From NCBI GenBank assembly GCA_037379345.1, contig CM074511.1, positions 47,808,862-47,872,861 of the forward strand: a stretch of 64,000 nt of DNA, read 5' to 3'. Each line of letters begins with the position of its first letter. The stretch's first letter is position 1. Position numbers and translations under genes: made by a program. The notes below the pieces were generated by a model. The model saw nothing but the letters and a program-made list of their open reading frames with translations. It did not search any database and had not been told where the DNA came from. Positions 2,303 to 29,600 of this stretch are shown here, in pieces. This stretch comes from Perna viridis. Its lineage: Eukaryota.

Positions 2303-5300
2303 CTTTTTCCTCAGCAAATCTGTAGAGTCCTGCCATGGGGTCAGCACCAGGTGACAGGACAAATATCAATGGTGTAAAATACTGAGAATCATTGAAGCTA
2401 AGAGATAGGTCAAAGGTAGGTGGCTCTACATATTTATGTTCCATGGTATCAACTATGAAATTCTGTATTGCAGGTACCATCTGTTGTAAAAACACATTTA
2501 AGCATTTGTACAATTTAACTCTTAACTTATAATGAAGATATCTACATTTGTATGAAAAACTAACAGACTTTCTCCTTTTAATGTTAAATTGAAATTTAAA
2601 AATGTTGACCAACATAAAAGTAAGTCCTAATAGTTTTTATGTTGACATGAAATTGTGGAAGAGAAAAATCAAATGTATTTTTTTTTCTTCATACATTTTT
2701 GAAAAAAATTTCCATGAAATATGAAGACACCAAAGTAATTCCTTATTTCACTAAGATAGAATATTTGACTTAGTTTGACCCACCTTATCAGGCCTGAGAC
2801 ATCTGAGAACTATTAACTTCTGTAATCTGTCCAGTTTATCCCACGGCTTTGGTAGTTCCTCTGTGTGGGGCATTGGTGAATCATAAATTTTCTTCCACTG
2901 TGTCAGCTATAATAACAAAGGTACATAGTATGAATTCATCACATCCCATGTACGAGTACAAATATATCTGTCAACAATTATAAAGTTTACTTTCTCAAAA
3001 ATATAAATCCGGCCTGAGTTTCATAAAAAAAAAAAAAAAAAAAAACTCAAATTGAAGTTTTCCTCAAATCATTGAATTTTCTCTTAAGTCTTCAATTTCA
3101 AGTGATTTGATTGGCAGACATTTGAGTTGAGGAAGAATCTGAGGAAGAAACTTGAGATTCTTTATGAAACTGGTAAACCATGCATTATTTAATAGATTGG
3201 TGACAGATACTACAATGTTGTCATTTTTCGCAATTTAGTTTTCTAATAATTAGCTAAATTTGACAGCATCATTTCGTTAACATTCTTTGCAATATCCTTC
3301 TCTGTGTCTTAATGTCACTTCTATTTACTATTTGGTACATACCAAGGTTTTAAATTGATCCATAAAACCTTTAAATGCAGGTAAGTCTGAGCACCGAACA
3401 ATTTCACTCCATGACTTGACAGGTAACCAAGCTGAAGCAGGATTAGGGAATGGATTTTCTAATGCCACACCACCAGTCAAAAGAAATCTCCACTCTCTAT
3501 CATCAATCTTCCCTCTGTTAAACAGTAATCATACAATACACTAAATGCAAACATGATGCTGAATGCCATTTCATGCTTATAACATAAAGCTCATTTCATA
3601 ATACATCAATATGTTTCTGCTTTAAACTTATGCAGAAAAAAATAAAAAAGTGCTATAGAGAAATAATGCAGACATCATCAAGTCTCAATACAAATAGATC
3701 AATATTTTATTTCAAAATGTTAGTAATAAAAATGAAATCTCATGAATTTAAGAAAAAAAAATCTTGGGACAAAGACTAACCAAGAAAAAAGATAAAACTC
3801 AATACATAAAAAAAATTTACTCAAAGAATACACACATTAACTGTGAATAACATGGGTTCACTTAAAAACTGTCAGTATGGAACAGGTAAATCAATTATAT
3901 CATTCAAATATTTCAAAGAAAATTTAACACAGTTCAGAAACAAAACATATTATATAGCCTTAATATCGTTACACGCCAATGTCATACGTAAAGTAAACAC
4001 CACATATTTGACATGGAGTATGATCGGCGGCGGAGTGATATCTTAATGCAAACTTTGCAAGGAGAATAACCGCCAGAGTGTTATTTTTGTAGTTATATGT
4101 TGAAATGTCTACCCTGGTTACGTAATTTGGTTGCCAACGATCTCTAAGTCAAGTTCAGTCTATAAATAGACTTCCTTGACAAAAACAAGTATTCAGAAAA
4201 CATGTCACTACCTCTACATCATCCAAGTACATAAGCATTTGTTTTTTTTTCAAACTTACTCTTGTTTCTGTATTCCAATACACAGCAGGAAAGAGAACAA
4301 TAACTTGTGATTCTCAAACAATGATCGACAAACATTAATGTAAATACTATAAGTAAAATGTTCATTTAGGTTCTCTATTCTTTTCTCTAAGTCTGGTGAC
4401 TGCTCACTGTTCAATATTGACTGAAATAATAAAAAAAAAAATTGAAAAAATATTAAACACAAAAAGTACAGGTATGTTAGGGAAGTACACATACTTAATA
4501 TTTTCTTGTGAATTTCATGTGGCTTTCACCTGTCAAAAATAATCATATAAATTTTGTGACAGGCCTCACTTAAATCAAATGAATTACGCCTTCACATAAA
4601 GTTTTCACATAAAAATCATGTGAAGTGAATTTCACATGGAATCATATCAATTTCATATACAGTAGATGTGAAACTCAATTCATGTAATCCATTGACACTA
4701 TCATTAAGAAATCAAACAATTGAAGAAAAAAAAGATTCAATAATTTTTTCCTCTGTCATGAATATAAATGATTTTGCATATACTTTCTTAACTTAAAAAA
4801 GCTAAAGTGACATAGCTACATTTCAATAATGACATCAAATTGTCAATTGGCAGCACCTATGAAAAGTAAATTGTATTAAACTGACCTGTATATAGAGGTT
4901 AATGAACCAAGACAGTGAATACTGATACATGGGGTCAATATTAGCCAGATCCTGGATCACAAAGAATAAAATACTTCCATGCTTTGCAACCTATAAAACA
5001 ATACATTGCCTATAAATAAATCATTACAACTCCGTGATTCTTTACATTAAATAACTGTGTTGGCCAAAAGAACCAGAAAATACTTCACTGAAAAACCTAT
5101 GTTTTTATACAATAGGGAAAAACAAACATTTCTATATGTTGCATTATTCACTTTGTTAAAACCATATAAATATGTTTCTATAATATTTTTAAGTGAAATT
5201 ATGAAGTGACATACAGGTTTATAACCATCCCTGACTTGGTCAATCTTGGTCTCTGTAGCAGTAGCTATTTCCTGTTTCTCTGATATCTCCTGAGACAACA

Positions 5301-8300
5301 CTTTACTGGATGACAGAATCTGTATGGCCTTCTCATCATCTAATATGTTACCCTGGTAAGTTAATCAGAGGATGTGATGAAGAACAAATAAATACAACCA
5401 TTAATCTAGTTTGGTAAAGGAAAAAAAAGGATGTTCTTGTTCCTTTGAACCATGTTATGTAAAAACTATGCTTCTGAAAGGATGTCATCATGACCAACAT
5501 GACATACACATGTAATAAAAAATCTTTAAAAATAATTAAAAATCTTTTGACCAGTTTAGCAGAAGAGATAGACATACTTTTAGACTTTATACTCAAATTA
5601 AATTTTTCAACAAACAATGATGTTTACACTAAATAGTCCTTATATCTTACTTTAAGTAAGAATACTGAAAATGTAATGTCATTGGATTTGGCAATTCATA
5701 ACACTATCTCCTATTTACAATAATTTGAAAGTACTTTAATTTGGGGATACCAAATTTCGTGGATTAGGAAAGTTACTCAGGTTCGTCAATTTGTGAATTC
5801 ATGGTTTTGTGGTTTTCAGTACACACATGAATAAGAATCTCCTTTTCATTGGAAAATGAATTTGGTGGTCTGGCTCACCCACAAAAACCACGAAAATTGG
5901 TAGCTCATGAACAATAATACTTTCACAGTATTTTGAAAGTGAACAACTAATGGAATCATTCTTTAAAGAGAATGAATTGGAAAATAAAAACACAAACCTC
6001 TGATGTTGACAAAACTTCCAAAATCTTATCTTCTATCTCTTTCAGTTGACGTTTGTTTTTGGCACTTTCTATGATGAGCTTGTTTTTCTTGTCCTCTAGA
6101 TCTGGTTTCTCTTTAGCAGCTACAATACCCAACAGCTGATCTTCTAACCCTAACAGGGTGATCATAAAGTTGATCAAAGTAACCTTCAAGTATAAATAAG
6201 AAACATAATTTCCTCACATATAATATATGGTTGACTAGGTTGTCAAGATGTCATTGTTTATAAATCTAACAAAATAAGTATTCCTTTTTCATTCTGTCAA
6301 TACTGTTATATTTCTGCATAATTTTTGTGAGGTTTTCTTGTAAATGACAGAGTGCCTTCTTTTCGATCTTTTTTTTTTCATTTTCTCTTCAGCTTTTCTT
6401 AAAACAGGATTTTTTATGTGTATGTGTATTACAAACCTTAACAGAAACCTCAGGAAGATAATGTGGATTGCGTAACCTTGTTGTTATGTAAAGTTTAAAA
6501 TCTTTACTGTATTCAATGATGTTGTCGCCCACTCTTATGTAATCCATGTTATTCTAAAAAATAGTAATAACTGTAATTAGAAAAATTCTTTACATCATAT
6601 TTCAAAGAATCATGATAAACCAATAAGCATAAGTCTAAAAGTTTTTTTTAATCATTCATTTAATAGGTATTCTAACTTCCATACTTTAATCAAACTGAGT
6701 GACATTTACACACTTAGTTGAAGGCATTATATTTGTTGTAGTTTAATTTTGTTTTAAGGCCAAAATAAAAAATATCCTAGATTCTCATCCCCTCCTGACC
6801 CAATTTTTTCACCCTTCCCAAAACATTTCAATTTGATTTGTTTTCCCTATTTTTCAGTCAAATTGATAAAAAATAAAATTCTTCTGCTTGCCCCTAATTT
6901 TGAAAAATGTTGGATGAGAATCTAGGATTTTATTTATTATGGCATTTAGGGCCTTACTAATTTGAATTTCTAACACTAACCTGTTTGAATGTTTGTTTAA
7001 GTAGAACAGGGTCCAGGATTGGATCTAATTCTTCTCCTACATTCTCCAGTAAACATGGATTTCCAAACTGAAAATAACAGCAAGACAATGACACAAAACT
7101 AGAACATATATGTAGAATATTTGAATAAATTCATCAAAATACTTAAAACCCTGTGAGATCTACAATGAAATACTATGGTAAAATCAGGTTACAATTATTC
7201 AACAAAAATAACAATGTCACTTAAAAATCTCAACTCTGAAATATTTTGCTGAATTTAATTAACTATTCCTAAAGCAAATCAATATAACAAGATACTGGCT
7301 AAAATCCTACAAACCTGAACACAATTTTCTAGTTGTCTGCTGTAGTTAGGATCAGAGAGTTTGATGACTTCCAATTTATTTGATTTTTCCATGTTTTTGA
7401 TCCACTTATTAGCCTGACCTTGTGGGTCTATCATCAGAGGCCATCGATTGGCATTCATCACTACTATTGCATTTTCTAGTGAATAACTGAAAGTAAAGCA
7501 TGTCCAATTCAGTGGTGTAACCAGGGCCAAACCAATGTGGAAGCCTTTCATAGCACAGAAAAAGGAGGGATGTACTTAAGTTGGTTTCTAGCATGTTGAT
7601 GCATCAGCTTGAAATACATTGTAGTTATGCAACTGGAATGCTACTTAACTTGTACAAAAATCATTGATATATTACCAACTGCTTTTGACCAAAATAAAAG
7701 CAGAAAATCAGTACAATAAATATTGAGGCTGCATTATGCAAGATGAATGAGAATGTTTTAGAGATAAGATTAACATTTTAAATTGATGGCAATGCCTGAA
7801 TTTTAAGATTTAAATTTTGGCCCCTTTTGTAGCTGGTAAAGACTATACATACACAAAAAGCTTTATGCAGTAAAATGGAACATCTGTTTCATTGCTACAT
7901 AACATGTATAAAAATGCAAGTTGGTGTCATGCCATCTCTTCTTCTCTTTCTTACAATATACTCAGCAGTCATAGATATTTGGTCTTTAAATACTTAGTAT
8001 TTTTCAGACTTATTCAGACTAAAGAAAACAAGCCATACATTTTTTGCTAAAAATCACTTGTATACATACTTATCTACAGGTAAACCTGCTATCTGCCAGT
8101 CTCTGATCTTGACAGGGTTCCCCAATGTATTCTGTATGGAGAAGTTTTCTGACACAGGAATGTTCCTTTCTTTACACATGGTATACCACTCCTTCAGACA
8201 TTCCTATACATAATACAATATAATGAAAAAATCATAGACAAAAGCACTGCAAGCTTTAGTATTAACTAAAAATGGCAACACTTTACATATTCACATAAAC

Positions 8301-17600: not shown

Positions 17601-20600
17601 TTTTGGACTTTAGAATAGGCTTCGTTCAGACAGGTGTTCAGTTTACACAAGTCAAAATTGATATAAAAGGACTTTAAAAAGTGTCTGGTTTAGACAGGTT
17701 TTTGTATTATTTATGGTTCAGTTTAAGTAGGTTTCATTGTACTACTATGTCAACAAAAAAGCATGGCATATCAAAGCAAAAACAATATGTGGTATGTTCC
17801 ATTATTGTACTTTACCTGAACAACTCTTGCAAAATCTCTAAGATTGAAGACATAATGTGACCTGGATGGGGTTGGCAGGAACTTAGATATAGCATTGTTA
17901 TATATCTCCATAGTACTTGTGATTATGATCTGTAAATTCAAATTTCACTTTATAACAAATGAGAAAAATTAATGTTTTCTTGATTCACTACTGAAGAATT
18001 GGCATACATTTTTTACCCAAGGTCAAAATATATGTAAATTGTGAGTGAAAGGTCCCATTTTACACATGGATAAATTCTTGAAAAACAGTGTTTAATCCAA
18101 AATTATATGAAATATATTTATTGCTTTTTTTTTCTTAGAGACTCACATTCAGTAAGTTTTCCAAAGTTAAATACTATGAAAAACTCATCTTTAACAGGAA
18201 TGCTACTGCTAAAACAAGAATTTAATTCCATCTTTTATTTTTCACTTTCTTGCCTCTAATCAACAAAACATACTGATACATGAACATCAAAATTGAAAAA
18301 ACAACTCACTCTAGAAAACCGTCTTAGATTTGTTTCAAATGATTTAAAATGCCAGTCAATGATTGGAGTAAATATACTCTTCATGGTTTCCTCATCAAAG
18401 GACTCTATGGCAATCACATTAAAATGTCTAAGGAAGCGAGGTGTGACATCGTTTCTTCCTCCACCAGGGGGTCCCATAGCTGACAACATGTTGATATCTA
18501 CTAGTTCCAATATACTGGTGTCTTTTCTGTAAAGAATGGAACATACTGTACCATGACTGTCCTCAATTTTTTTGCGCTTACAAAATTATCTATCATTCAA
18601 ATCATACTGACTAAGGAAAACTGAGACTTGGCCAGCACATTAAAAAAAAACCAATTCATCCAACCATAATTCCATTCTTAAAAATCAAATACAAAATCTG
18701 TCATAACTTATCCAGATCATTAATAACTATAAAATTACACCTGCTTCAGACAAATTGGCGATAACTGTACTTAACCTTGTTTACCATAATACTGATAAAG
18801 TAGCATTTAAATAAAAAAAAAAGCTATATTCACCCAACACTGAGTATAAAGCTTACCTATCAAACCAATATCCATGGTCTATGTACTGTCTAAGGATTTC
18901 TATGGGAGGTTGAGCTCCATACTTCTCTTTGGCAGGCATGTTAAGATCATCTACAAACACAATCAGCTTCTTACCAGGAGCAGGTCCATGTACTCCTTTC
19001 TTTCTCCTGTAATAAAAGATTATTTGAACACTTTATACCTTGATTTAAATGTACAGAAGTAGAAAAAGAAACCTTAGTAAATGCTTATTCTGCTACTTTT
19101 TATACAGATTTCTATTGATTGATTGATTGCAGTTTTATATTTAAAAACACTAACTGTATTCACTAATTTCAAAACAAGTCTTTTTATCTTAATTTGATGT
19201 CAGTAGTCATTAACTTTGTAATATCTGCAATGAAAAAGATGTGCAATGTATGCAATAGTTCTATTCTGTCACACTGTACACACTTACTTTATAAGATAAT
19301 CTATATACATCCTATCCAACTTATAGAAATTTACCTATCCAACTTAGAGAAAATGATATCCTGAGTTGCATTAGCTGAAGTTTGAGCAGAGAAGTTGACA
19401 TTGTTGATGATATATTTCTCCTTTGGTAGACTAAGTAGATAATTATTACTGATGGCTGATTTCCCAGTACCAGTAGGTCCAACTAATAACAAAGGTTTGT
19501 CCTTCATCAGCAATCTCTCAAGAAAATACTTCTGTCTCTCAGTCTCAACTGTGTTGATGATCAACTCATTAATCTGTAGATCAAAGGTCAAAGGTCAAAT
19601 CAAGGACATGATGATACATTCTTGATATGAGGGGGAAAAATTAATGACTGAAATGCAACAGAAAGGGGGCATGTATACTAATATGTTGAAATGGATTAGT
19701 GGAAAGTGATTACTTTTTAACAAAATGAATTAATATTGAATTAAAAAAATATCTATTAGCATATTAGAATTAATAAGGAAAATTGAAGTTTCAATGAAGT
19801 AATATGTTATAAATGACACAAAATTGCTGAAACAAAACATACATGTTCATCATTACAATTATCTCATCCCATGTGCAAGTGCAGAACAGAGGATAGAATC
19901 TTAGCTCAGGAGCTCGATAGGAACATGGCTTAACATGAAAAGAGAAGCTATTTTTTACAAAGACAGATCCCCTTTGGACATATCAGCCAAACACAAGTTT
20001 GTCTTCACATGGACATAACCTATCAACCATTGGTACAGATGACCAACTATCCAACAGACTGTTTGTATAATACTTATATAAACTTTGTTTGGCTTGTAAT
20101 ATTCAGAGCAAGAATAGGAATGTCTAAAGACCCCATTCAAACCTGTAAATCATATGACAGATAAGACTGAGAGATGAACTTTGACCCCTTGAATTGATGT
20201 GCATGTGGCTTACCATAATCCGTAGCTCATTGTCTTTCTGTAAAACACACAAGGTGAGGTGTTAATGAAAATAAAACAAACATGTTAGTGCACAGCTGTA
20301 AACATAATATAAAGCTGTAATAGGTTTAGTACCAATTTATGCAGAATTTAGGATTTTTCATTAGTGTAAAAACTTAATACAGAGTAAATCTTAGAAAAAA
20401 TACTTGTGAAAATGAAATTAAATGCTTTAGTTCATTATTAGCATTACAGCAGGTTAACTTCAGGGAATTTACTTGGTTTCCCTTTGGTGTAAATAACATT
20501 TGGTGGAATGACCGTTTCCTGCTAAAACCCCTTAAGTAGTTAACTGAAAAATTAATTAAAAAGGAGATTTGAACTTTCTATCATTTCATAGGTATCTTAA

Positions 20601-23600
20601 TCTAAATTTGATAGAAAACTTAAATATCTTTTTCGATCATCTAGTTATCTACCTGAAGGTTGTGATTTAACCAAGGGAAGACCAATTCTATTCTCTGAAG
20701 TTAACCATTTTACTCGCTGTAATAATTACATTTCAGTGCCTTTACTTGTTTACTCAGTCTGCATATAGTGGTTCCCATTACATTACACAACACCAAACAC
20801 ATATATGCCATTCATCAAAATAATGACTTGCGTTTAATATCAAGTTTGGTTTTAAAACTTGAAACATTGGTTAGATATCAAAGCAAAGCATTTCGTATTA
20901 ATAGTGTAAGGAGTTGTTCTATACGCCAAATTAATTAAAATGTTAACTTAAATACATAACATGTTTCCATGCCAAATTATTAAAATATTAACTTAAATAC
21001 ATAACATCTATATTAAACAAACAATTCAGAGCTGTTATGCTCTTATGTTTTCTATAATTAAAAATATACCACCTACCAACTACAATATTAAATGTGTAAC
21101 AAATACATGTATGAGCTACAGGTGTTATAAATACTCTCTTATTCCTATTCTTAGAACCAGAAAATGATATATTGTTTTATATAACCGCTTGAATTTAATG
21201 CACTCCTTATTTCAATAAAGTGCATTTAATTTACATTAAATTAATATTCTCAAATTACCACTGTTAAATTAAAAAATATTGGAGCCAGTTCTCACCGAAG
21301 ATTGGCTCTGATCTGAGCAGTATATAATAAAGTGCTGGACACACAGAGAAACATATTAATAAGATAGTTAATTGGAAAGGAGAATGATCAAAATATAATC
21401 CCATGTGCTGCAAGTACTTGGAAAAAACACTCATTTAATTTTGGCAATTAATTATCATATTAATATTCTTTACTGTGCTCCTGTTTTGAGTCACATCCAA
21501 AACTTAACCTTCTAAAGGAAAAAAAAAAATCCTTTAAAACACGACATGAACTACAATGCCGGTGTTACTTGGCATGTAAATATGTGCAATACAAATTAGA
21601 TAATATTAAATAAAATTAGTTTCAAAATCTACACTACATTAGTCAGAGTTAAACGTGCATTTGACAGAGAGCTATGGTCTATTTATTCCATCATGCATTC
21701 TAAATATAGACAGTTTCCAACATGCATTCTAAATATAGACAGTTTCCAACATGCATTCTAAATATTGTCAGTTTCCATCATGCATTCAAAATATAGTCAG
21801 GTTTCATCACACATTCTAAATATGTGTAGAAACATATGCATACAATTTAACTTCTATTGTAATATCAGGCACATGCAGGGCATTGTAATGAGAATAAATT
21901 CACAGAAAAAAATTGATAGGTGTCATCAGAAAAAGACAACATGGCCACCCCTTGTATAACCAATAAGATGACCCTCCCAAAAAGTTTACAACATGAGTCT
22001 ACCAGTAACAATCATCTTAATACACCGTTGAGGATTTTAGTGTGCCACCTTTTGAGCAATTTGATGGCTATGTACCTCCTACCACAACCACACACTTGTG
22101 TAATCCAAACCTGTTGTCACATAGAATTATGACCTACCGGTAATGTTGAGGAACAATCTGAGTTTAATGAAGACTAGAAAAATATACAACAATTAAATGA
22201 ACAAAGATCCTTCCATTAACCTATTGCTTCATTCCGATTTCTCATCAATTATTAATATGCTACACTTTCCTGAAAGAACACTGTGCAAAATTTCAATAAT
22301 ATTTGTTCAATACTTTTTTTGAGTTACTAATTACAAAGTAAGTGCCCATAAGCATGACAGACAGATGGTCATTGGACCTAGACCTGGCCCCAGTGCCACA
22401 AAGTTTGAAACAATACTCAAGTCTGAGAAAATTCTTAACTGTTTGTGTCATCATCTATTTCAATTATTGTGATTGGAGTTACCATGGAAGCTATGAATAT
22501 TATCACACTTAAATATTTTCAAGTTTTGTGGCGGTGGGGTCTACATTCATGGTTGGTGACACAAATAAAAACTCCAAATCCAGTTTGTTTCATGCAAATC
22601 ATGCACCATGATACTTCAAACTATAAAGATACATGTGCATGTACAGCTACAACTCAGCAACATACAAAGAAAATCAGAGATGACACCTAACAAACTATGA
22701 AAGAAACACAAACAGAAGTTTTAACTATCATTAGAAACATGCTGTTACTATATAACATGCATTTCAAATGCAGTTACCATATCTTGTCCACCGAAGGCAT
22801 CCTTAGGTTTCGACTAATAGAATAAATAATTTCATTTACAGATAAGCTGACTTCCTTGGTTGTTAGAAAGTCAATGTAGTATAGCCGTCTCCTTTACAAG
22901 AGGGGCTTACATTTTCCTTTAACAAATTGTCAAAGCTCAAAATGAAAATATGAATTTATTTTAGTCAAAACTATATTATGGCCAATAGTTTGCAAACTGA
23001 AAATCTCTTCTATTGGTTGAAATTTCACAGAAAAAAATTATGTAGCTTGTAAATTTGTAATCCTTTGCAACTTCAGCAAATATAAATTCTTAAACATAAA
23101 AAAATAAGAAGTCTACACTATAAATTCAATTGAATAAAATGGAATTACATAAATCATGATATTGGTTGTATCAAAATCCTTCACCTTATAAGGGATTATA
23201 GACGTTGTCATGCTAATATAATACCCATTCATATCTAATCTTCCTACCAACTTCACCCAATAGCAAGATAACATTTGACAGAATTGGAAATATATGAACA
23301 TTCATATACTGATAACATAATATCAAATCTAAAATCTAAAATTTTAAAATGGAAATTTTCGCAAATCTGCTATTTCAAACAGAAACAGGATTTGGGAACA
23401 TGCTGAATTGAACACCAGAGTTTTCATGGTCAATCTACAAACCAAATAAAAGACCATTCTACAATATGACCTACATTTTCGAGTTACCAGTAAATAACAG
23501 TAGTACTGCAGAACAAAAAGTTGGTGTTCAACAATCTATGTGATGAAAAAAATTGAAGAAAAATGGGAAAAATATTGATGATCAATAAAAAGACAATTGA

Positions 23601-26600
23601 AAGACTAAATTAGTTAAACAAGGCAATTGCAATATAAATACCCCCCAAATAGCCCCACCCCCAGTAATCATATGCAAACGGGTATAATATATCAGAACTA
23701 GGTGCTTTGTATAATTTGTAAATATGTGCTTTGTAGACAACTATTTCTCTTAGCAATAGAGATTAATGAATATTTTAGAACTATAAATTGTAAAGCAACT
23801 ACCAAGATTTTGCATTTAATAGTATATATAGGCTTACGTAATAATTTGATGTTTTTAATTTACCAGTACTTCAAACAAAAATAATTAAAAATCCCAATCT
23901 TAACACAAAAATTATCAGTTACTCCTGCATTTTTAAAATCTGACAGATTACTAAATAATTATTGATCCTTAAATTACATTACTATTTTAAAAATAATAAG
24001 GCGTTCAAGTCAAAATATTTTCAAATTTAAAAAAATATATATATAAAGAATATATATATACGTAACAATATTCACCCCTTCCCACCTCAGCCTTTCTACA
24101 TTACTATGTAATATTGACATGCTGATAAATCTAGAGGTTTACCTGAATGGCCTGTAAACATTAAATAAACATATAATAAGAAACAAAAAATAAAATGCAA
24201 ACATAACAGTAGTTTTACTATGTCGGGGCTTGATCATTTTTCTTGGCTTCAGTATAACTTCCTTAGATAGATAGACCAGTATGTTTTTTTAACACTGACA
24301 TTGTGAAGAAAGTACAAATGTAATGAGCATAGAAAAGAACCTTAGGCCTAAAATATAATACAAGTAGTTGTGTTTCCTATTACACTTTTGAAAAAAATAG
24401 GATAGGTTGTTAGGGATATTTTTTACATTGAGTCTATGCAAGAAACATACAGACTTTGATAGTGCTCATTAAAAAACGACAAAATACTTAAGGGTACACT
24501 AATTAGCTGGGGAAAAAAACATGGTGTGTAGGTTTATAGGAAACACATATCTTTTTTCATTTGGCATTAGTATCTCAAGTCAAAAGGCATAAAGCGGAGG
24601 TACTAGAATTCAAGTATTCCTTTTTTTGTGATAAATAAAATGTTTTGGATCCTTGACTTCACAAATATTAATTAATCAAATTCAACATTATTATTCAATA
24701 TTAAAAAATCACTAATCAAAAATTTATGCCATGAAAGTAACAGTCCTTATCATGATAAAATGAATCAAGAGCGATTTTTATCCCTTGTATTAGTGAATTG
24801 AAGAAATTAATGAATGACAAATGACAGCCCCTAACACAGATCTGTGAAAATAAAACAAAGTTTAAAGTAATGACCTGTCCCTGAGTGACTAAAATGAAAT
24901 TTAGAAGCATAAGCTTTAAAATTATTGTATACCACATCTAATAAAGCATAACTTTAAGCATTTATCAAAGCTAAGCACATCAAAATCCAATTTTCTTTGA
25001 CACTTTCAACAGAAAATGACATTCATCTTCAATGTTACCTTAGCTTTATCATCAATACTGAATGCTTGAATGAGACTGCTCCACTGACACCATGCTCCGT
25101 ACTGTTTCTTTATGTAGACATGATCGTACACAGTCCCTTTCTTTGGAATCAACAGGTTTCTTGCAAACTTTAAATCTTTTGGCCTGTTTGAAAACCAGTG
25201 CAGATTGTTAAATCATGTTTTATATATTAAAATTCAATACAATTTCAAACAGAATCAAATGCATAAACACCTTTGTCATTTAATAATTAAGGTAACTAGC
25301 TGAATACTGTTTAATACAACCCAAAATTTTATGTCAAAAGAGTTTAATTTAAATTTCAAATTGCTGATTAAAATTAAAAAGAATCTTCACTGATACATGA
25401 TTTATTTTTTCTTATATCAAAAAGCAAAAAATTTAGTGTTACCTTGAACTTTTGGAATTGTATTGTCAAACTCTACAAACATCCAGAACAAATGTACAAA
25501 AACTGTACAAATGTCAAGAATAAATGTACAAACACTGTACAAACAAATGTACAAAAACTCAGTATGGTTTTATTGTAATTATGTCCTTTTATTAATTAAA
25601 TACTGAGTATGCTTAAAAAGTATGATTTAATTTTGAAACCTGAAACACCAAGAGTGGATACTGAAAATTAAATACCAGTCCAAACACCTGTAAGTATGTA
25701 AATATAGAATAGTTAGTCCTACCCACACAGGTCACACTTCAATTATTTGTTGTATCTACAGACCATATGTCTTGTTAGTGAATAAAAACACATTCAAGCA
25801 GCCATAATGTAATTCAAAATATCAAAAAATATTTCTACCACCAGAGAAAAAAATATATTTCATGGGAGACAGATTGAGGATCAAATCAATGAAATTCTTA
25901 TACATTTTATAAGATTTACTTTTACCAACCACTTTGTTTTCTTACAACATAGTAAGTTCAATGCATGGTTATTACTTTCTCATGTGATATCTCTCACAAT
26001 CTTATTATAGCATATACAATAATGATGTTCTGGGGTAGAGTTGGTCAATTAATTAAATAACAATTAGGGATGAACTTCCTTAGGAAGCTGACTGGGGAGA
26101 TATAAACTTAATAGATTTGATAATAATCCAGTTATCCAACCTAAGGAAGTTCACAAAATAAATGTCATTTTATGAAGAAAAGACAAACTCTATCCGCTAA
26201 ACATCATCATTGTTTGTGCTGTAACAATTTAATACAGAGTACAAATAAATATTCTCTGACAATGAATTGCTGACACCAAAATGATATTAATTTCATTGGG
26301 TTTTATCATTTCAATATAACAATTTATGAAATCAATTTCTCCAAGTAAGTTATACTATCAGCATTAGCCTATAAAGGGCACACAGAAATCAGATTGGGAA
26401 AGCATGGGGAATGGGTCAAAACCGAACAATCAAACCTTTAGGATACTGCTTCATATAGAGAGGGACTCAAACAGAAGTATGATCTATTTATAGCTAGGGG
26501 GAATTCCTCAATCAACCTCACTTTAATTCTTACCTAGTCATCCCTTGAACCCTATAACATTGAGATTATAAGGTTTATACAGAGTGACAGAATATACACG

Positions 26601-29600
26601 TGAATAGGAAATATGCTAAAGCTGTGTATCTGTGTGTCATTTATTGTACAGCAATACAACCATTTGTACAAAATAAATAAAACAATACTGCAGTTATAAG
26701 TGCTACAGAGCTCATGTTAACATCATGTATTTGTAATGTCACTAACTTAAAAAAAAAACAAAAAAACTTGATGACCATAATGACTTAAAAATGTCACAAA
26801 ACCATGTGTTACATGGGTATTTATAGTCTACTTTACTACTTCTGTATTGCTGTACAATAAATATATTATTGCATGAATATTGGGGAAATTATATCATTGC
26901 AGAATGTTGATCTCATCGTTCGAATTCTATCCAAGAGGATATTCCCCAGTATCGATGCAATAATTCTAAAATATTCATTAAATAAAACATGTGATCTTCA
27001 ATTTAAGAAGGCAAAACAGCATTGATGCAGTATGTCTAGAATTTAAGCCAAACATGTGCTCGAAAACAAAATTATGAAGCTAGAAAATTCATAGCACAAT
27101 TAAAGGGTAAACATTCAAAATTTTTTTTGCTTTTTTTTCTAGCACAATTTACTCCAAATTCTTTTTATCATCAAAATGAAAAAAATATTAATAGCAATGC
27201 ATATGAATCTTTAATTCACAATAAAACTGTTTTTTTCTCATCTTCAAAGACTTAGAAAAAACTCCCATAAAAGACATATTTTTGCTTTCAGTCATCAAAT
27301 GAATAGTTCCAGATTTTTAAAAATAAAAATCTATAATACATGTATGAAAAAAGAATGTAAAACCAAATTGAGTAAAACATTTTACCAAACATATGTCTTT
27401 AGTTAATCAAATAAAAGCATGTGAACTGAAAAAAGTGAAATAAATATAGTGCCCTGAAAAAAATAAAATACAAATATTTGTTTTTCTTTCATGGTTAATA
27501 ACCACAACTCAACCACTTCACATACTTGGGATATTTTGCAGTATTGGCATCCATCTCACATAAGCCTCGGAAGAATTCATCAAACTTGAGACGTGAGTTT
27601 TGATCGAGGGTAGCACCAATAGACCAGACAACAGAGAAGAAGAAGTAACTAACAACCATGTTAGTTTTTTCCTCCATTTCCTTCCTTTCTTCCTCTGAAG
27701 CCTGAGGTTGTTGAGGTTGTCCTTCCTCATCCATTTCTTCATCTGCTTCATCAATAAAGTCATCTTCCTCCTCATCTTCACCTATGGATCTACAAAATAA
27801 TATAATGTAACATTAAGGTTATTAAACTTTAGAAAAATAAAGATGACCTTTACCTTTTATCATTGACTACTGGTATATTGGTATGTAAGGTATGATTTTT
27901 CTATAACCTGAAGCAATGCTTAATTGATTTTTTAACCAAATATTTTGTTCTTTTATCACTGGGTCTACACATTTCTGAAAATAGCCAAAAGATGAAGAGA
28001 AGATGTGAAAAATCAACATTAAAACCTTTTTTTATTATTCTATAATTTGATCCCCCCCCAAACTTTCCATTCATATAAATAGTCATAATCAAATAAAAAC
28101 TGATTCAAAGATTAATGATTTAAAACTAGGAATTTTTTTATGTACAAGTAAATAAAATAAAAAGAATCTTCCATTTTTGTTTTTGTTTTCATGGTAGTCA
28201 TGGTTTTGTAAAACAAAAAAAAAAAAACTAGGACATGAATTTCAAATATTGCTAGAAACAGTTCCTAGACTTGTGTTCTCTATCACATAGTAATCTAAGG
28301 TTACCAACCTGACATCATCAAGCATACAGGTATATAATGTCAACATACTCTTCGTCAGATGGAGAGGATGACATGTTAGTAAACACCGGCAGTACTTTGA
28401 TACAAAGTTTAAACATGGTGGCAATATCCAATCAAATAACAGCTAGCAAATACAAAATAGCAAAACAGCTAATGTTAAAATATAGCTTTAAAAAGTAGCA
28501 GCATCAAAATAAACATTGCAAAAATTAGGTGATGTATTGCATTCTAGCCTGTGATTGTAAATCTTATAAAGTCATTAGTATTTAATAAATTTCAATGTAG
28601 ATTTTAACGCCAATGACCATTTTCAGTAGCAAATAAGACATCAAAATGTATATGTTAAATAAATAAATCAATAGCTGCACACACTAAAGCACTTGATATG
28701 CCCATTCCCACCTTTTTTTGGTGACTGAAGTCCCAGAACTATGAAAAGAAAGAGGACACGAAGAAAATCCTGTACCAAAAAATGATTAAAATCCCTCACA
28801 ATATTTTAAATCTGGATTGATAGAACGATAGCAATATATCAACTTATGTCCATCAAAAGACAAGTGTACAAAAAAGAAGTGACAAAAGAATATGCCAAAA
28901 TATTACACTTATGATCTGGTGCATTTTAAGCAATAAAATGTGATGTCTTTGTAAACAAAATGATCCTTTTTTTTTTAAATTTCATTAACAACTGCAATAA
29001 ATTAAAATCTAATGTCTAGCAACAAATAAAATCTTGAATTAATAAGAGATAGATGCAACCTGTAAGAGGACGAACATGTTTTTCTATTGAAAGTAAAATA
29101 ACCTGGTTTGAACTGCAATTTGAAAAAAGTTTCTGATTTGAAAAAATAAAGCTAATTAGATCCTGTATAATTTTCATGATGAGAAACGTTGACTAAAGTT
29201 TAGTACGCCAGGTAGATATCTTTATCCTCTGCAAACATAACAAGTATATCAAAACTAGCAATTCAGACTTACTTTTATGGTTTCTCTATGCTCATCATTA
29301 AGATTGGGAGGTAGATCATTCTCCATCCAAGATTTAATGAGTGGATCCCATCCTAACTGCAGGGGATCTAGGTAAATCATTCCACACCTGTAAACAGTTA
29401 ACAATGAATTGATGCACAATTTTTAAACATCAGGCATAAAAAAATCATAAAAAAGAGTCCTGGGAAACATCACATAAGTTCAGATACAAAATATTGTAAT
29501 TCTTCATCAACCAATTGGACATGAATTCTTGAAATTCTTTACCTGCTGACTGTAGCTGGTGAGGCCTGCTCCAAATCCTGAGCTTCAAATATCATATTCT

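What the first reader, a model, noticed from the sequence alone, without database searches (positions are those of the whole stretch)
20214..24151. Cluster of candidate frame-preserving microexons in the long AAA2-AAA3 intron
The phase-0 intron 19574-25038 (5.5 kb, whereas most introns here are under 1 kb) holds several short minus-strand segments bounded by YAG and GTA-type donors. All are 3n long and stop-free in phase 0: 24143-24151 (9 nt, AIQ; TTTACAG/GTAAAC; long U-rich tract with upstream UGC), 23488-23505 (18 nt, YYCYLL; TTTTTGTTCTGCAG/GTAACT), 22778-22813 (36 nt, [12 protein letters not shown]; CTATTAG/GTAACT), 22138-22173 (36 nt, [12 protein letters not shown]; TTTTTCTAG/GTAGGT) and 20214-20237 (24 nt, KDNELRIM; TTTTACAG/GTAAGC). 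The first four are spaced about 640-710 bp apart, like ordinary introns of this gene. Inclusion would insert variable peptides between ...IDDKAK and INELII..., just before AAA3. Inference: a combinatorial microexon cassette tuning the motor ring, which I do not know to be described for axonemal dyneins. In the other long introns, the chance AG..GT segments I checked were mostly non-3n or contained stops, but this was not a formal test.
Basis: partly seen in the sequence, partly recalled or inferred. Interest (0 to 1): 0.8.

Follow-up and report, generated by a model that had tools for sequence, protein, structure and literature searches.

The report
One conserved microexon among five candidates
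Of five tiny candidate exons in a long intron of a mussel cilia-motor (dynein) gene, one 24-base exon keeps its splice signals and reading frame in distant relatives and is probably real, the other four look like chance, and no RNA data could be read to show when it is used.

Summary
All five AG...GT segments exist exactly as described, in a phase-0 intron (19574-25038, minus strand) of a DNAH3-type inner-arm dynein gene of a mussel. As a set they are not beyond chance. With splice-site thresholds fixed beforehand, 4 of 12 pseudo-exons are 3n, which is exactly one third. Their density is only 2-3 times that of the other introns (P about 0.04).

One candidate is different. The segment 20214-20237 (24 nt, KDNELRIM) is the only conserved island in the intron. 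In one relative it is 24/24 identical, with a conserved branch-point and pyrimidine tract, although synonymous sites of the neighbouring exon are saturated. In a second relative it reads KDRDLRIM, with five of seven changes at third codon positions and AG|...|GTAAG kept. It is unique in the genome and lies at the same relative position.

The other four have no counterpart in the one complete orthologous intron I obtained, and two have acceptors weaker than every real acceptor in my model.

The exon-skipping junction is colinear with all other dyneins examined. Inclusion therefore adds a lineage-specific 8-residue insertion between the AAA2 lid and AAA3.

The combinatorial-cassette idea is not supported.

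The parts
25039..25183 (-). Upstream constitutive exon, ending ...IDDKAK. It holds the end of the AAA2 lid domain.
   Evidence: Translation. Pfam Dynein_AAA_lid positions 100-126 of 126. Human DNAH3 8j07_g3 residues 1993-2030. Orthologous exons lie at L002:2874-3017, L006 and L007.
20238..25038 (-). Upstream intron if the microexon is used (4801 nt). It contains the four unsupported candidates and several repeated elements.
   Evidence: No Rfam match.
20238..20289 (-). Conserved intronic block upstream of the microexon. It holds a branch-point-like ACTAAC (20284-20289), a pyrimidine-rich tract with no AG, and the acceptor ...TTTTACAG.
   Evidence: It lies in the only alignable island between the window intron and L004 (window 20289-20197, 88% over 94 nt, E 6e-28). 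In the three-species alignment ACTAA, the AG-free tract and CAG are kept.
20214..20237 (-). Conserved 24-nt phase 0-0 microexon encoding KDNELRIM.
   Evidence: L004:1006-1029 is 24/24 identical. L002:5153-5176 reads KDRDLRIM, with 7 nt changes, 5 of them at third codon positions. It is flanked by AG and GTAAG in all three species. Acceptor 5.1 bits, 55th percentile of real sites. It is unique in the 723 Mb genome.
19574..20213 (-). Downstream intron if the microexon is used (640 nt). Not conserved beyond the donor GTAAG.
   Evidence: The spacing to the AAA3 exon is similar in L004 (about 660 nt).
19335..19573 (-). AAA3 exon (INELII...GPTGTGKS...), constitutive.
   Evidence: Translation. Pfam AAA_7 positions 10-88. 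Human DNAH3 residues 2043-2122, E 5e-27.
24143..24151 (-). Candidate 1 (9 nt, AIQ): unsupported.
   Evidence: Good acceptor (7.1 bits) and weak donor (3.4 bits). No AG|GCNATHCAR|GT in the L002, L004 or L007 orthologous sequence. Too short for a peptide test.
23488..23505 (-). Candidate 2 (18 nt, YYCYLL): unsupported.
   Evidence: Acceptor at the 23rd and donor at the 17th percentile. The best L002 match, YIFYIV, is weak and out of order.
22778..22813 (-). Candidate 3 (36 nt, [12 protein letters not shown]): most likely chance.
   Evidence: Acceptor 0.2 bits, below all 53 real acceptors. No peptide counterpart in relatives.
22138..22173 (-). Candidate 4 (36 nt, [12 protein letters not shown]): most likely chance.
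   Evidence: Acceptor 0.6 bits, 2nd percentile. No peptide counterpart in relatives.

Best explanation
The long intron before the AAA3 exon of this mussel DNAH3-type inner-arm dynein gene contains one genuine protein-coding microexon, 20214-20237 (24 nt, KDNELRIM). It has its own branch point, pyrimidine tract, CAG acceptor and GTAAG donor. When spliced in, it adds eight residues between the end of the AAA2 lid and the first strand and helix of AAA3, about 30 residues before the AAA3 Walker A. Both forms stay in frame. The skipped form equals the canonical dynein sequence, so the included form is a lineage-specific insertion.

Shown: the exon, its frame and its splice signals are under purifying selection.

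Inferred: it is a regulated cassette exon rather than a constitutive one. Its synonymous sites and upstream intron are more conserved than the neighbouring constitutive exon, which points that way.

Speculative: the insertion changes how AAA2 and AAA3 move against each other.

The other four candidates are chance pseudo-exons in an AT-rich intron.
For: The window intron and 1688 nt upstream of the AAA3 exon in relative L004 share only one alignable block, window 20289-20197 (88% over 94 nt, E 6e-28). The AAA3 exon of the same pair is only 72% identical, and 37.5% at third codon positions. The microexon is 24/24 identical in L004 and lies 660 nt upstream of the AAA3 exon, against 641 nt in the window.

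In L002 the ortholog AAAGACCGAGACCTTCGCATCATG reads KDRDLRIM. It has seven changes, five at third positions and three synonymous. The chance of two or fewer amino-acid changes from seven random substitutions is 0.008. Its BLOSUM62 score is 31, against 16.2 +/- 2.8 (maximum 27) in 200 shuffles of that intron.

AG, GTAAG, ACTAA and the AG-free tract are kept in all three species. Among 155 by 88 frame-preserving AG..GT segments compared between the window and L002, this is the only similar pair. It is unique in the genome, so it is not a repeat.

The skip junction is colinear with human DNAH3, DNAH7 and DNAH12, with P0149 and with about 45 continuous dynein fragments (0 residues between the exons, range -2 to +2).
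Against: There is no RNA evidence of any kind. No spliced protein from a mussel relative covering the junction turned up in three protein searches.

Conservation rests on only two relatives of unknown identity. The exon is absent from the complete 8.1 kb orthologous intron of a more distant relative (L007), and from the 1.4-1.6 kb upstream sequence available in L008 and L010.

Its donor scores low (3.1 bits) with my crude self-trained matrix. Eight codons give little statistical room.
Confidence: 0.8

Rival explanations
1. The 24-nt exon is real but constitutive in mussels. Every transcript carries KDNELRIM, and the reader and simple gene models merely missed a small exon. In that case there is no isoform switching.
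For: Good acceptor and canonical GTAAG donor. Coding-type conservation in L002. No data show skipping.
Against: In L004 the synonymous sites (8/8) and 52 nt of upstream intron are far more conserved than the neighbouring constitutive exon (37.5% at third positions). By general knowledge of alternative exons, that pattern marks regulated exons. The skipped form is the canonical dynein sequence.
Confidence: 0.3
2. All five segments, the fifth included, are non-exonic. The conserved block would be an intronic regulatory element or non-coding RNA that happens to be bounded by AG and GT.
For: No RNA evidence. Conserved intronic elements do exist. In L004 the conservation extends into the intron.
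Against: The block ends exactly at GTAAG. In L002 the changes fall on third codon positions and keep 6 of 8 residues (P 0.008). The frame matches the phase-0 intron. No Rfam family matches. The sequence after the AG (AAAGAC) does not rebuild a 5' splice site, so it is not a recursive splice point.
Confidence: 0.12
3. One reading: several of the five, three or more, are real and are combined to give a ladder of insertions before AAA3.
For: All five are 3n and stop-free. The density of frame-preserving pairs is 2-3 times that of the other introns. All five lie in single-copy sequence.
Against: The 3n rate is 4/12 at thresholds set beforehand. Candidates 3 and 4 have acceptors below the real range. 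None of candidates 1-4 has a counterpart in the complete L002 intron or in L007. The length of this linker is constant within two residues across dynein families.
Confidence: 0.04

Closest known systems
Conserved cassette microexons of animals (3-27/30 nt), such as the SRRM3/4-dependent neuronal programme (PMC12626424; 10.1101/2024.09.17.613571)
   Same: Length of 24 nt, frame-preserving, a surface or linker insertion into a folded protein, and strong conservation of the exon and its upstream intron.
   Different: The host gene is an axonemal dynein of ciliated cells, not a neuronal gene. No conserved UGC motif sits next to the acceptor. Tissue regulation and dependence on any factor are untested. 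Conservation is seen only within a mussel lineage.
CLTC exon 31, a muscle-specific microexon in a large structural or motor-associated protein (PMC13676984, abstract)
   Same: A non-neuronal conserved microexon that would diversify a large, otherwise highly conserved protein.
   Different: Different protein, tissue and lineage. For CLTC the alternative use is demonstrated; here it is not.
Schistosome micro-exon genes (the name appears in PMC3166049; the description of their structure is my recollection, not read here)
   Different: Only one exon is supported here. It lies inside a conserved enzyme, not in a secreted variable protein.
DNAH3-type inner-arm dynein heavy chain (human 8j07 chain g3)
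   Same: Best match of both flanking exons. The exon-skipping junction is colinear within two residues.
   Different: Human DNAH3, DNAH7 and DNAH12, an annelid DNAH3 (P0219) and about 45 other dynein fragments have no extra residues at this point.

Membership tests
Protein-coding microexon (30 nt or less) | Bounded by a functional-looking 3' splice site (branch point, pyrimidine tract, AG) and a 5' splice site (GT) | tested here: met
   ACTAAC at about -48, an AG-free pyrimidine-rich tract, CAG|, |GTAAG. All are kept in three species. Acceptor at the 55th percentile of this gene's sites.
Protein-coding microexon (30 nt or less) | Open frame compatible with the flanking exons, under coding-type selection | tested here: met
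   3n, phase 0-0, no stop. L002 keeps 6 of 8 residues despite 7 nt changes, 5 of them at third positions (P 0.008).
Protein-coding microexon (30 nt or less) | Present in mature mRNA | not tested
No spliced mussel protein was found.
Alternative (cassette) exon | Both the included and the skipped isoform are observed | not tested
   Only indirect evidence: synonymous sites and the upstream intron are more conserved than the neighbouring constitutive exon.
SRRM3/4 (eMIC)-dependent neural microexon | UGC-type enhancer close upstream of the 3' splice site, and neural inclusion | tested here: not met
   There is no conserved UGC between the branch point and the AG in the three species. The only UGC in the window lies at about -50 and is not shared. 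Tissue was not tested.
   Only one of the five is conserved. Two have acceptors below the real range. The 3n rate is at chance.
Recursive splice site (ratchet point) | An AG followed at once by a regenerated 5' splice site (AG|GTRAGT) | tested here: not met
   The sequence after the AG is AAAGAC.
DNAH3-type axonemal inner-arm dynein heavy chain | Best similarity to DNAH3 over AAA3, with the Dynein_AAA_lid then AAA_7 domain order | tested here: met
   8j07_g3 E 4.7e-27 against the next family, DNAH1, at 8.7e-17. Pfam.

The most novel reading that the evidence does not exclude
Mussels evolved a regulated 8-residue cassette microexon at the AAA2-lid/AAA3 boundary of an inner-arm dynein. One gene would then yield two motor variants, used for instance in different ciliated cell types such as gill cilia, larval velum or sperm. 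That would be the first case of alternative splicing tuning the ATPase ring of an axonemal dynein.
Probability: 0.3. Interest if true: 0.7.

Novelty: new member of a known kind. Interest (0 to 1): 0.5.

Why it matters
Axonemal dynein heavy chains are usually treated as one gene, one motor, with diversity coming from paralogues. A conserved in-frame microexon right before the regulatory AAA3 site would be a second route to motor diversity, and it is simple to test: isoform-specific RT-PCR, then motility assays of the two forms.

Tried and rejected
1. RNA evidence. The look-up of sequencing runs listed 24 runs. After that, no letters of 24012-24051 were sent to any search tool. Local scripts did read the whole window file.

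2. Nearest relative, L001 (AAA3 exon 89% identical at protein level). The contig holds only 713 nt upstream and nothing aligns, so it is uninformative.

3. The genome search 'relatives' has no eukaryotes.

4. Repeats. The candidates are not inside the repeated elements of the intron, so this neither supports nor rejects them.

5. Rfam search of the intron: nothing.

6. Protein searches for spliced mussel fragments across the junction. These returned only genomic ORFs or other taxa. P0086 is a same-species genomic read-through (L011 is 99.8% identical to the window).

7. A degenerate pattern for the microexon found only itself in the genome and nothing in the JGI metagenome contigs.

8. Accession look-up in papers to name the relatives: nothing.

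9. The idea that the microexon is a duplicate of the AAA3 exon start (NEL.I shared). Beyond AATGAG the nucleotides do not match, so I dropped it as unsupported.

Full report
**What is there.** The minus strand of the window carries a large dynein heavy-chain gene. The exon 25039-25183 ends ...IDDKAK, and the exon 19335-19573 begins INELII and holds the P-loop GPTGTGKS. Both match human DNAH3 best (8j07 chain g3): residues 1993-2030 for the first and 2043-2122 for the second, the latter at E 4.7e-27 against 8.7e-17 for the next family. Pfam places the end of Dynein_AAA_lid (positions 100-126 of 126) in the first exon and AAA_7 positions 10-88 in the second. Earlier notes of this scan call the organism a mussel.

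**The five segments.** All five are in the sequence exactly as described, with the quoted flanks and peptides.

**Are they more than chance?** I built a crude self-trained exon chain for the gene: 60 exons, of which 53 were used to train splice-site matrices. It misses a few real exons, so it serves only as a control.

- The intron is the longest in the model, 5465 nt against a median of 484.
- Ignoring site quality, the intron holds 863 AG..GT pairs of 6-60 nt. Of these 304 are 3n, and 154 are 3n and stop-free.
- The five candidates score as follows. Acceptors: 7.1, 3.6, 0.2, 0.6 and 5.1 bits, at percentiles 81, 23, 0, 2 and 55 of real sites. Donors: 3.1-3.7 bits, at percentiles 17-23.
- At thresholds fixed beforehand (the 5th percentile of real sites), 12 pairs pass and 4 are 3n, exactly one third.
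- Similar frame-preserving pseudo-exons occur in other introns.

**Repeats and other features.** Searches of the species' own genome show that the intron holds several repeated elements: 22250-22551, 24342-24575 and 20453-20726, plus a 29-nt tandem repeat at 21686-21823. All five candidates lie in single-copy DNA. No Rfam family matches.

**RNA.** Expression is therefore untested. From then on I kept those places out of every search tool.

**Relatives.** A word search with the AAA3 exon returned genomic ORFs of the same exon from other animals, and their contigs could be fetched.

- L004 (AAA3 exon 87.5% identical at protein level) holds 1688 nt upstream of the exon.
- L002 (84%) holds the complete orthologous intron, 3018-6225, between exons at 2874-3017 and 6226-6465.
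- L007 (71%) holds a complete orthologous intron of 8.1 kb.

A peptide scan gave an exact KDNELRIM at L004:1006-1029 and KDRDLRIM at L002:5153-5176. Both are flanked by AG and GTAAG.

**Strength of the conservation.**

- Between the window and L004, the only alignable part of the intron is window 20289-20197 (88% over 94 nt, E 6e-28).
- The AAA3 exon of the same pair is only 72% identical, and 37.5% at third codon positions.
- The microexon is 24/24 identical in L004 and sits 660 nt upstream of the AAA3 exon, against 641 nt in the window.
- The three-way alignment keeps ACTAA (a branch-point consensus), an AG-free pyrimidine-rich tract, CAG, the exon and GTAAG. Similarity stops immediately after the donor.
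- In L002 seven nucleotides differ, five at third positions and three of them silent. Seven random substitutions would leave two or fewer residue changes with probability 0.008. The peptide match scores 31, against 16.2 +/- 2.8 in shuffles of that intron.
- Among all frame-preserving AG..GT segments of the two introns (155 and 88), this is the only similar pair.
- The element is unique in the 723 Mb genome, so it is not a mobile element.

I conclude that 20214-20237 is a real coding microexon.

**The other four.** None has a counterpart in L002 or L007. The 9-nt AIQ segment can only be tested by pattern, and no match was found. Closer relatives covering that part of the intron were not available, so a species-specific exon cannot be excluded. 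Nothing supports one, however, and candidates 3 and 4 have acceptors outside the real range.

**What inclusion would do.** The skipped junction is exactly colinear with another dynein fragment (P0149). It is also colinear with about 45 continuous dynein sequences from many taxa, an annelid DNAH3 among them, with 0 residues between the projected exon ends (range -2 to +2). It matches human DNAH3, DNAH7 and DNAH12 within two residues.

Inclusion is thus a lineage-specific insertion of eight residues between the AAA2 lid and the start of AAA3. The exon is absent from L007, and from the 1.4-1.6 kb available upstream in L008 and L010, so it looks restricted to part of the mussel lineage.

In L004 the synonymous sites and the upstream intron are far better kept than the neighbouring constitutive exon. 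By general knowledge of alternative exons, that is what one expects of a regulated cassette exon. This is an inference, not a result.

Any structural effect is therefore speculation.

**Known or new.** Full-text searches found no paper on microexons or alternative splicing at this point of an axonemal dynein heavy chain. Conserved microexons as a class are well known (PMC12626424; PMC13676984). I rate this as a new member of a known kind. Interest is moderate, pending RNA evidence.

Noticed in passing
window 22250-22551: Short repeated element with more than 1000 first-look candidates in the genome. It matches its copies on both strands at the same place, so it is palindromic and MITE-like.
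   Followed up: partly
window 24342-24575 and 20453-20726: Two further dispersed repeat families inside the intron (about 70-80% identity to many copies). Together with the element above they explain part of the intron's length, but not all of it.
   Followed up: partly
window 21686-21823: A 29-nt unit repeated 4.8 times in tandem (89% matches).
   Followed up: no
L002:3018-6225 and L007:1925-10066: The orthologous intron is also long in relatives (3.2 kb and 8.1 kb), so a long intron at this position is not peculiar to this species.
   Followed up: partly
window 27526-27781 (minus): The AAA2-lid exon starts with a long acidic low-complexity stretch ([20 protein letters not shown]...) that Pfam does not cover. 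L002 has a comparable acidic stretch with a different sequence.
   Followed up: no
L011 (Logan contig, 2172 nt) = window 18463-20634: A contig from another run of the same species is 99.8% identical. It carries changes that remove two intronic stop codons, which produced a spurious 169-aa 'protein' (P0086) in the public protein collection.
   Followed up: yes
I left it out of all later searches.
   Followed up: no
window 20214-20237 versus 19553-19576: The microexon peptide (K)DNELRIM resembles the junction it precedes, (K)INELII. At the nucleotide level only AATGAG is shared, so an origin by duplication is unsupported.
   Followed up: partly
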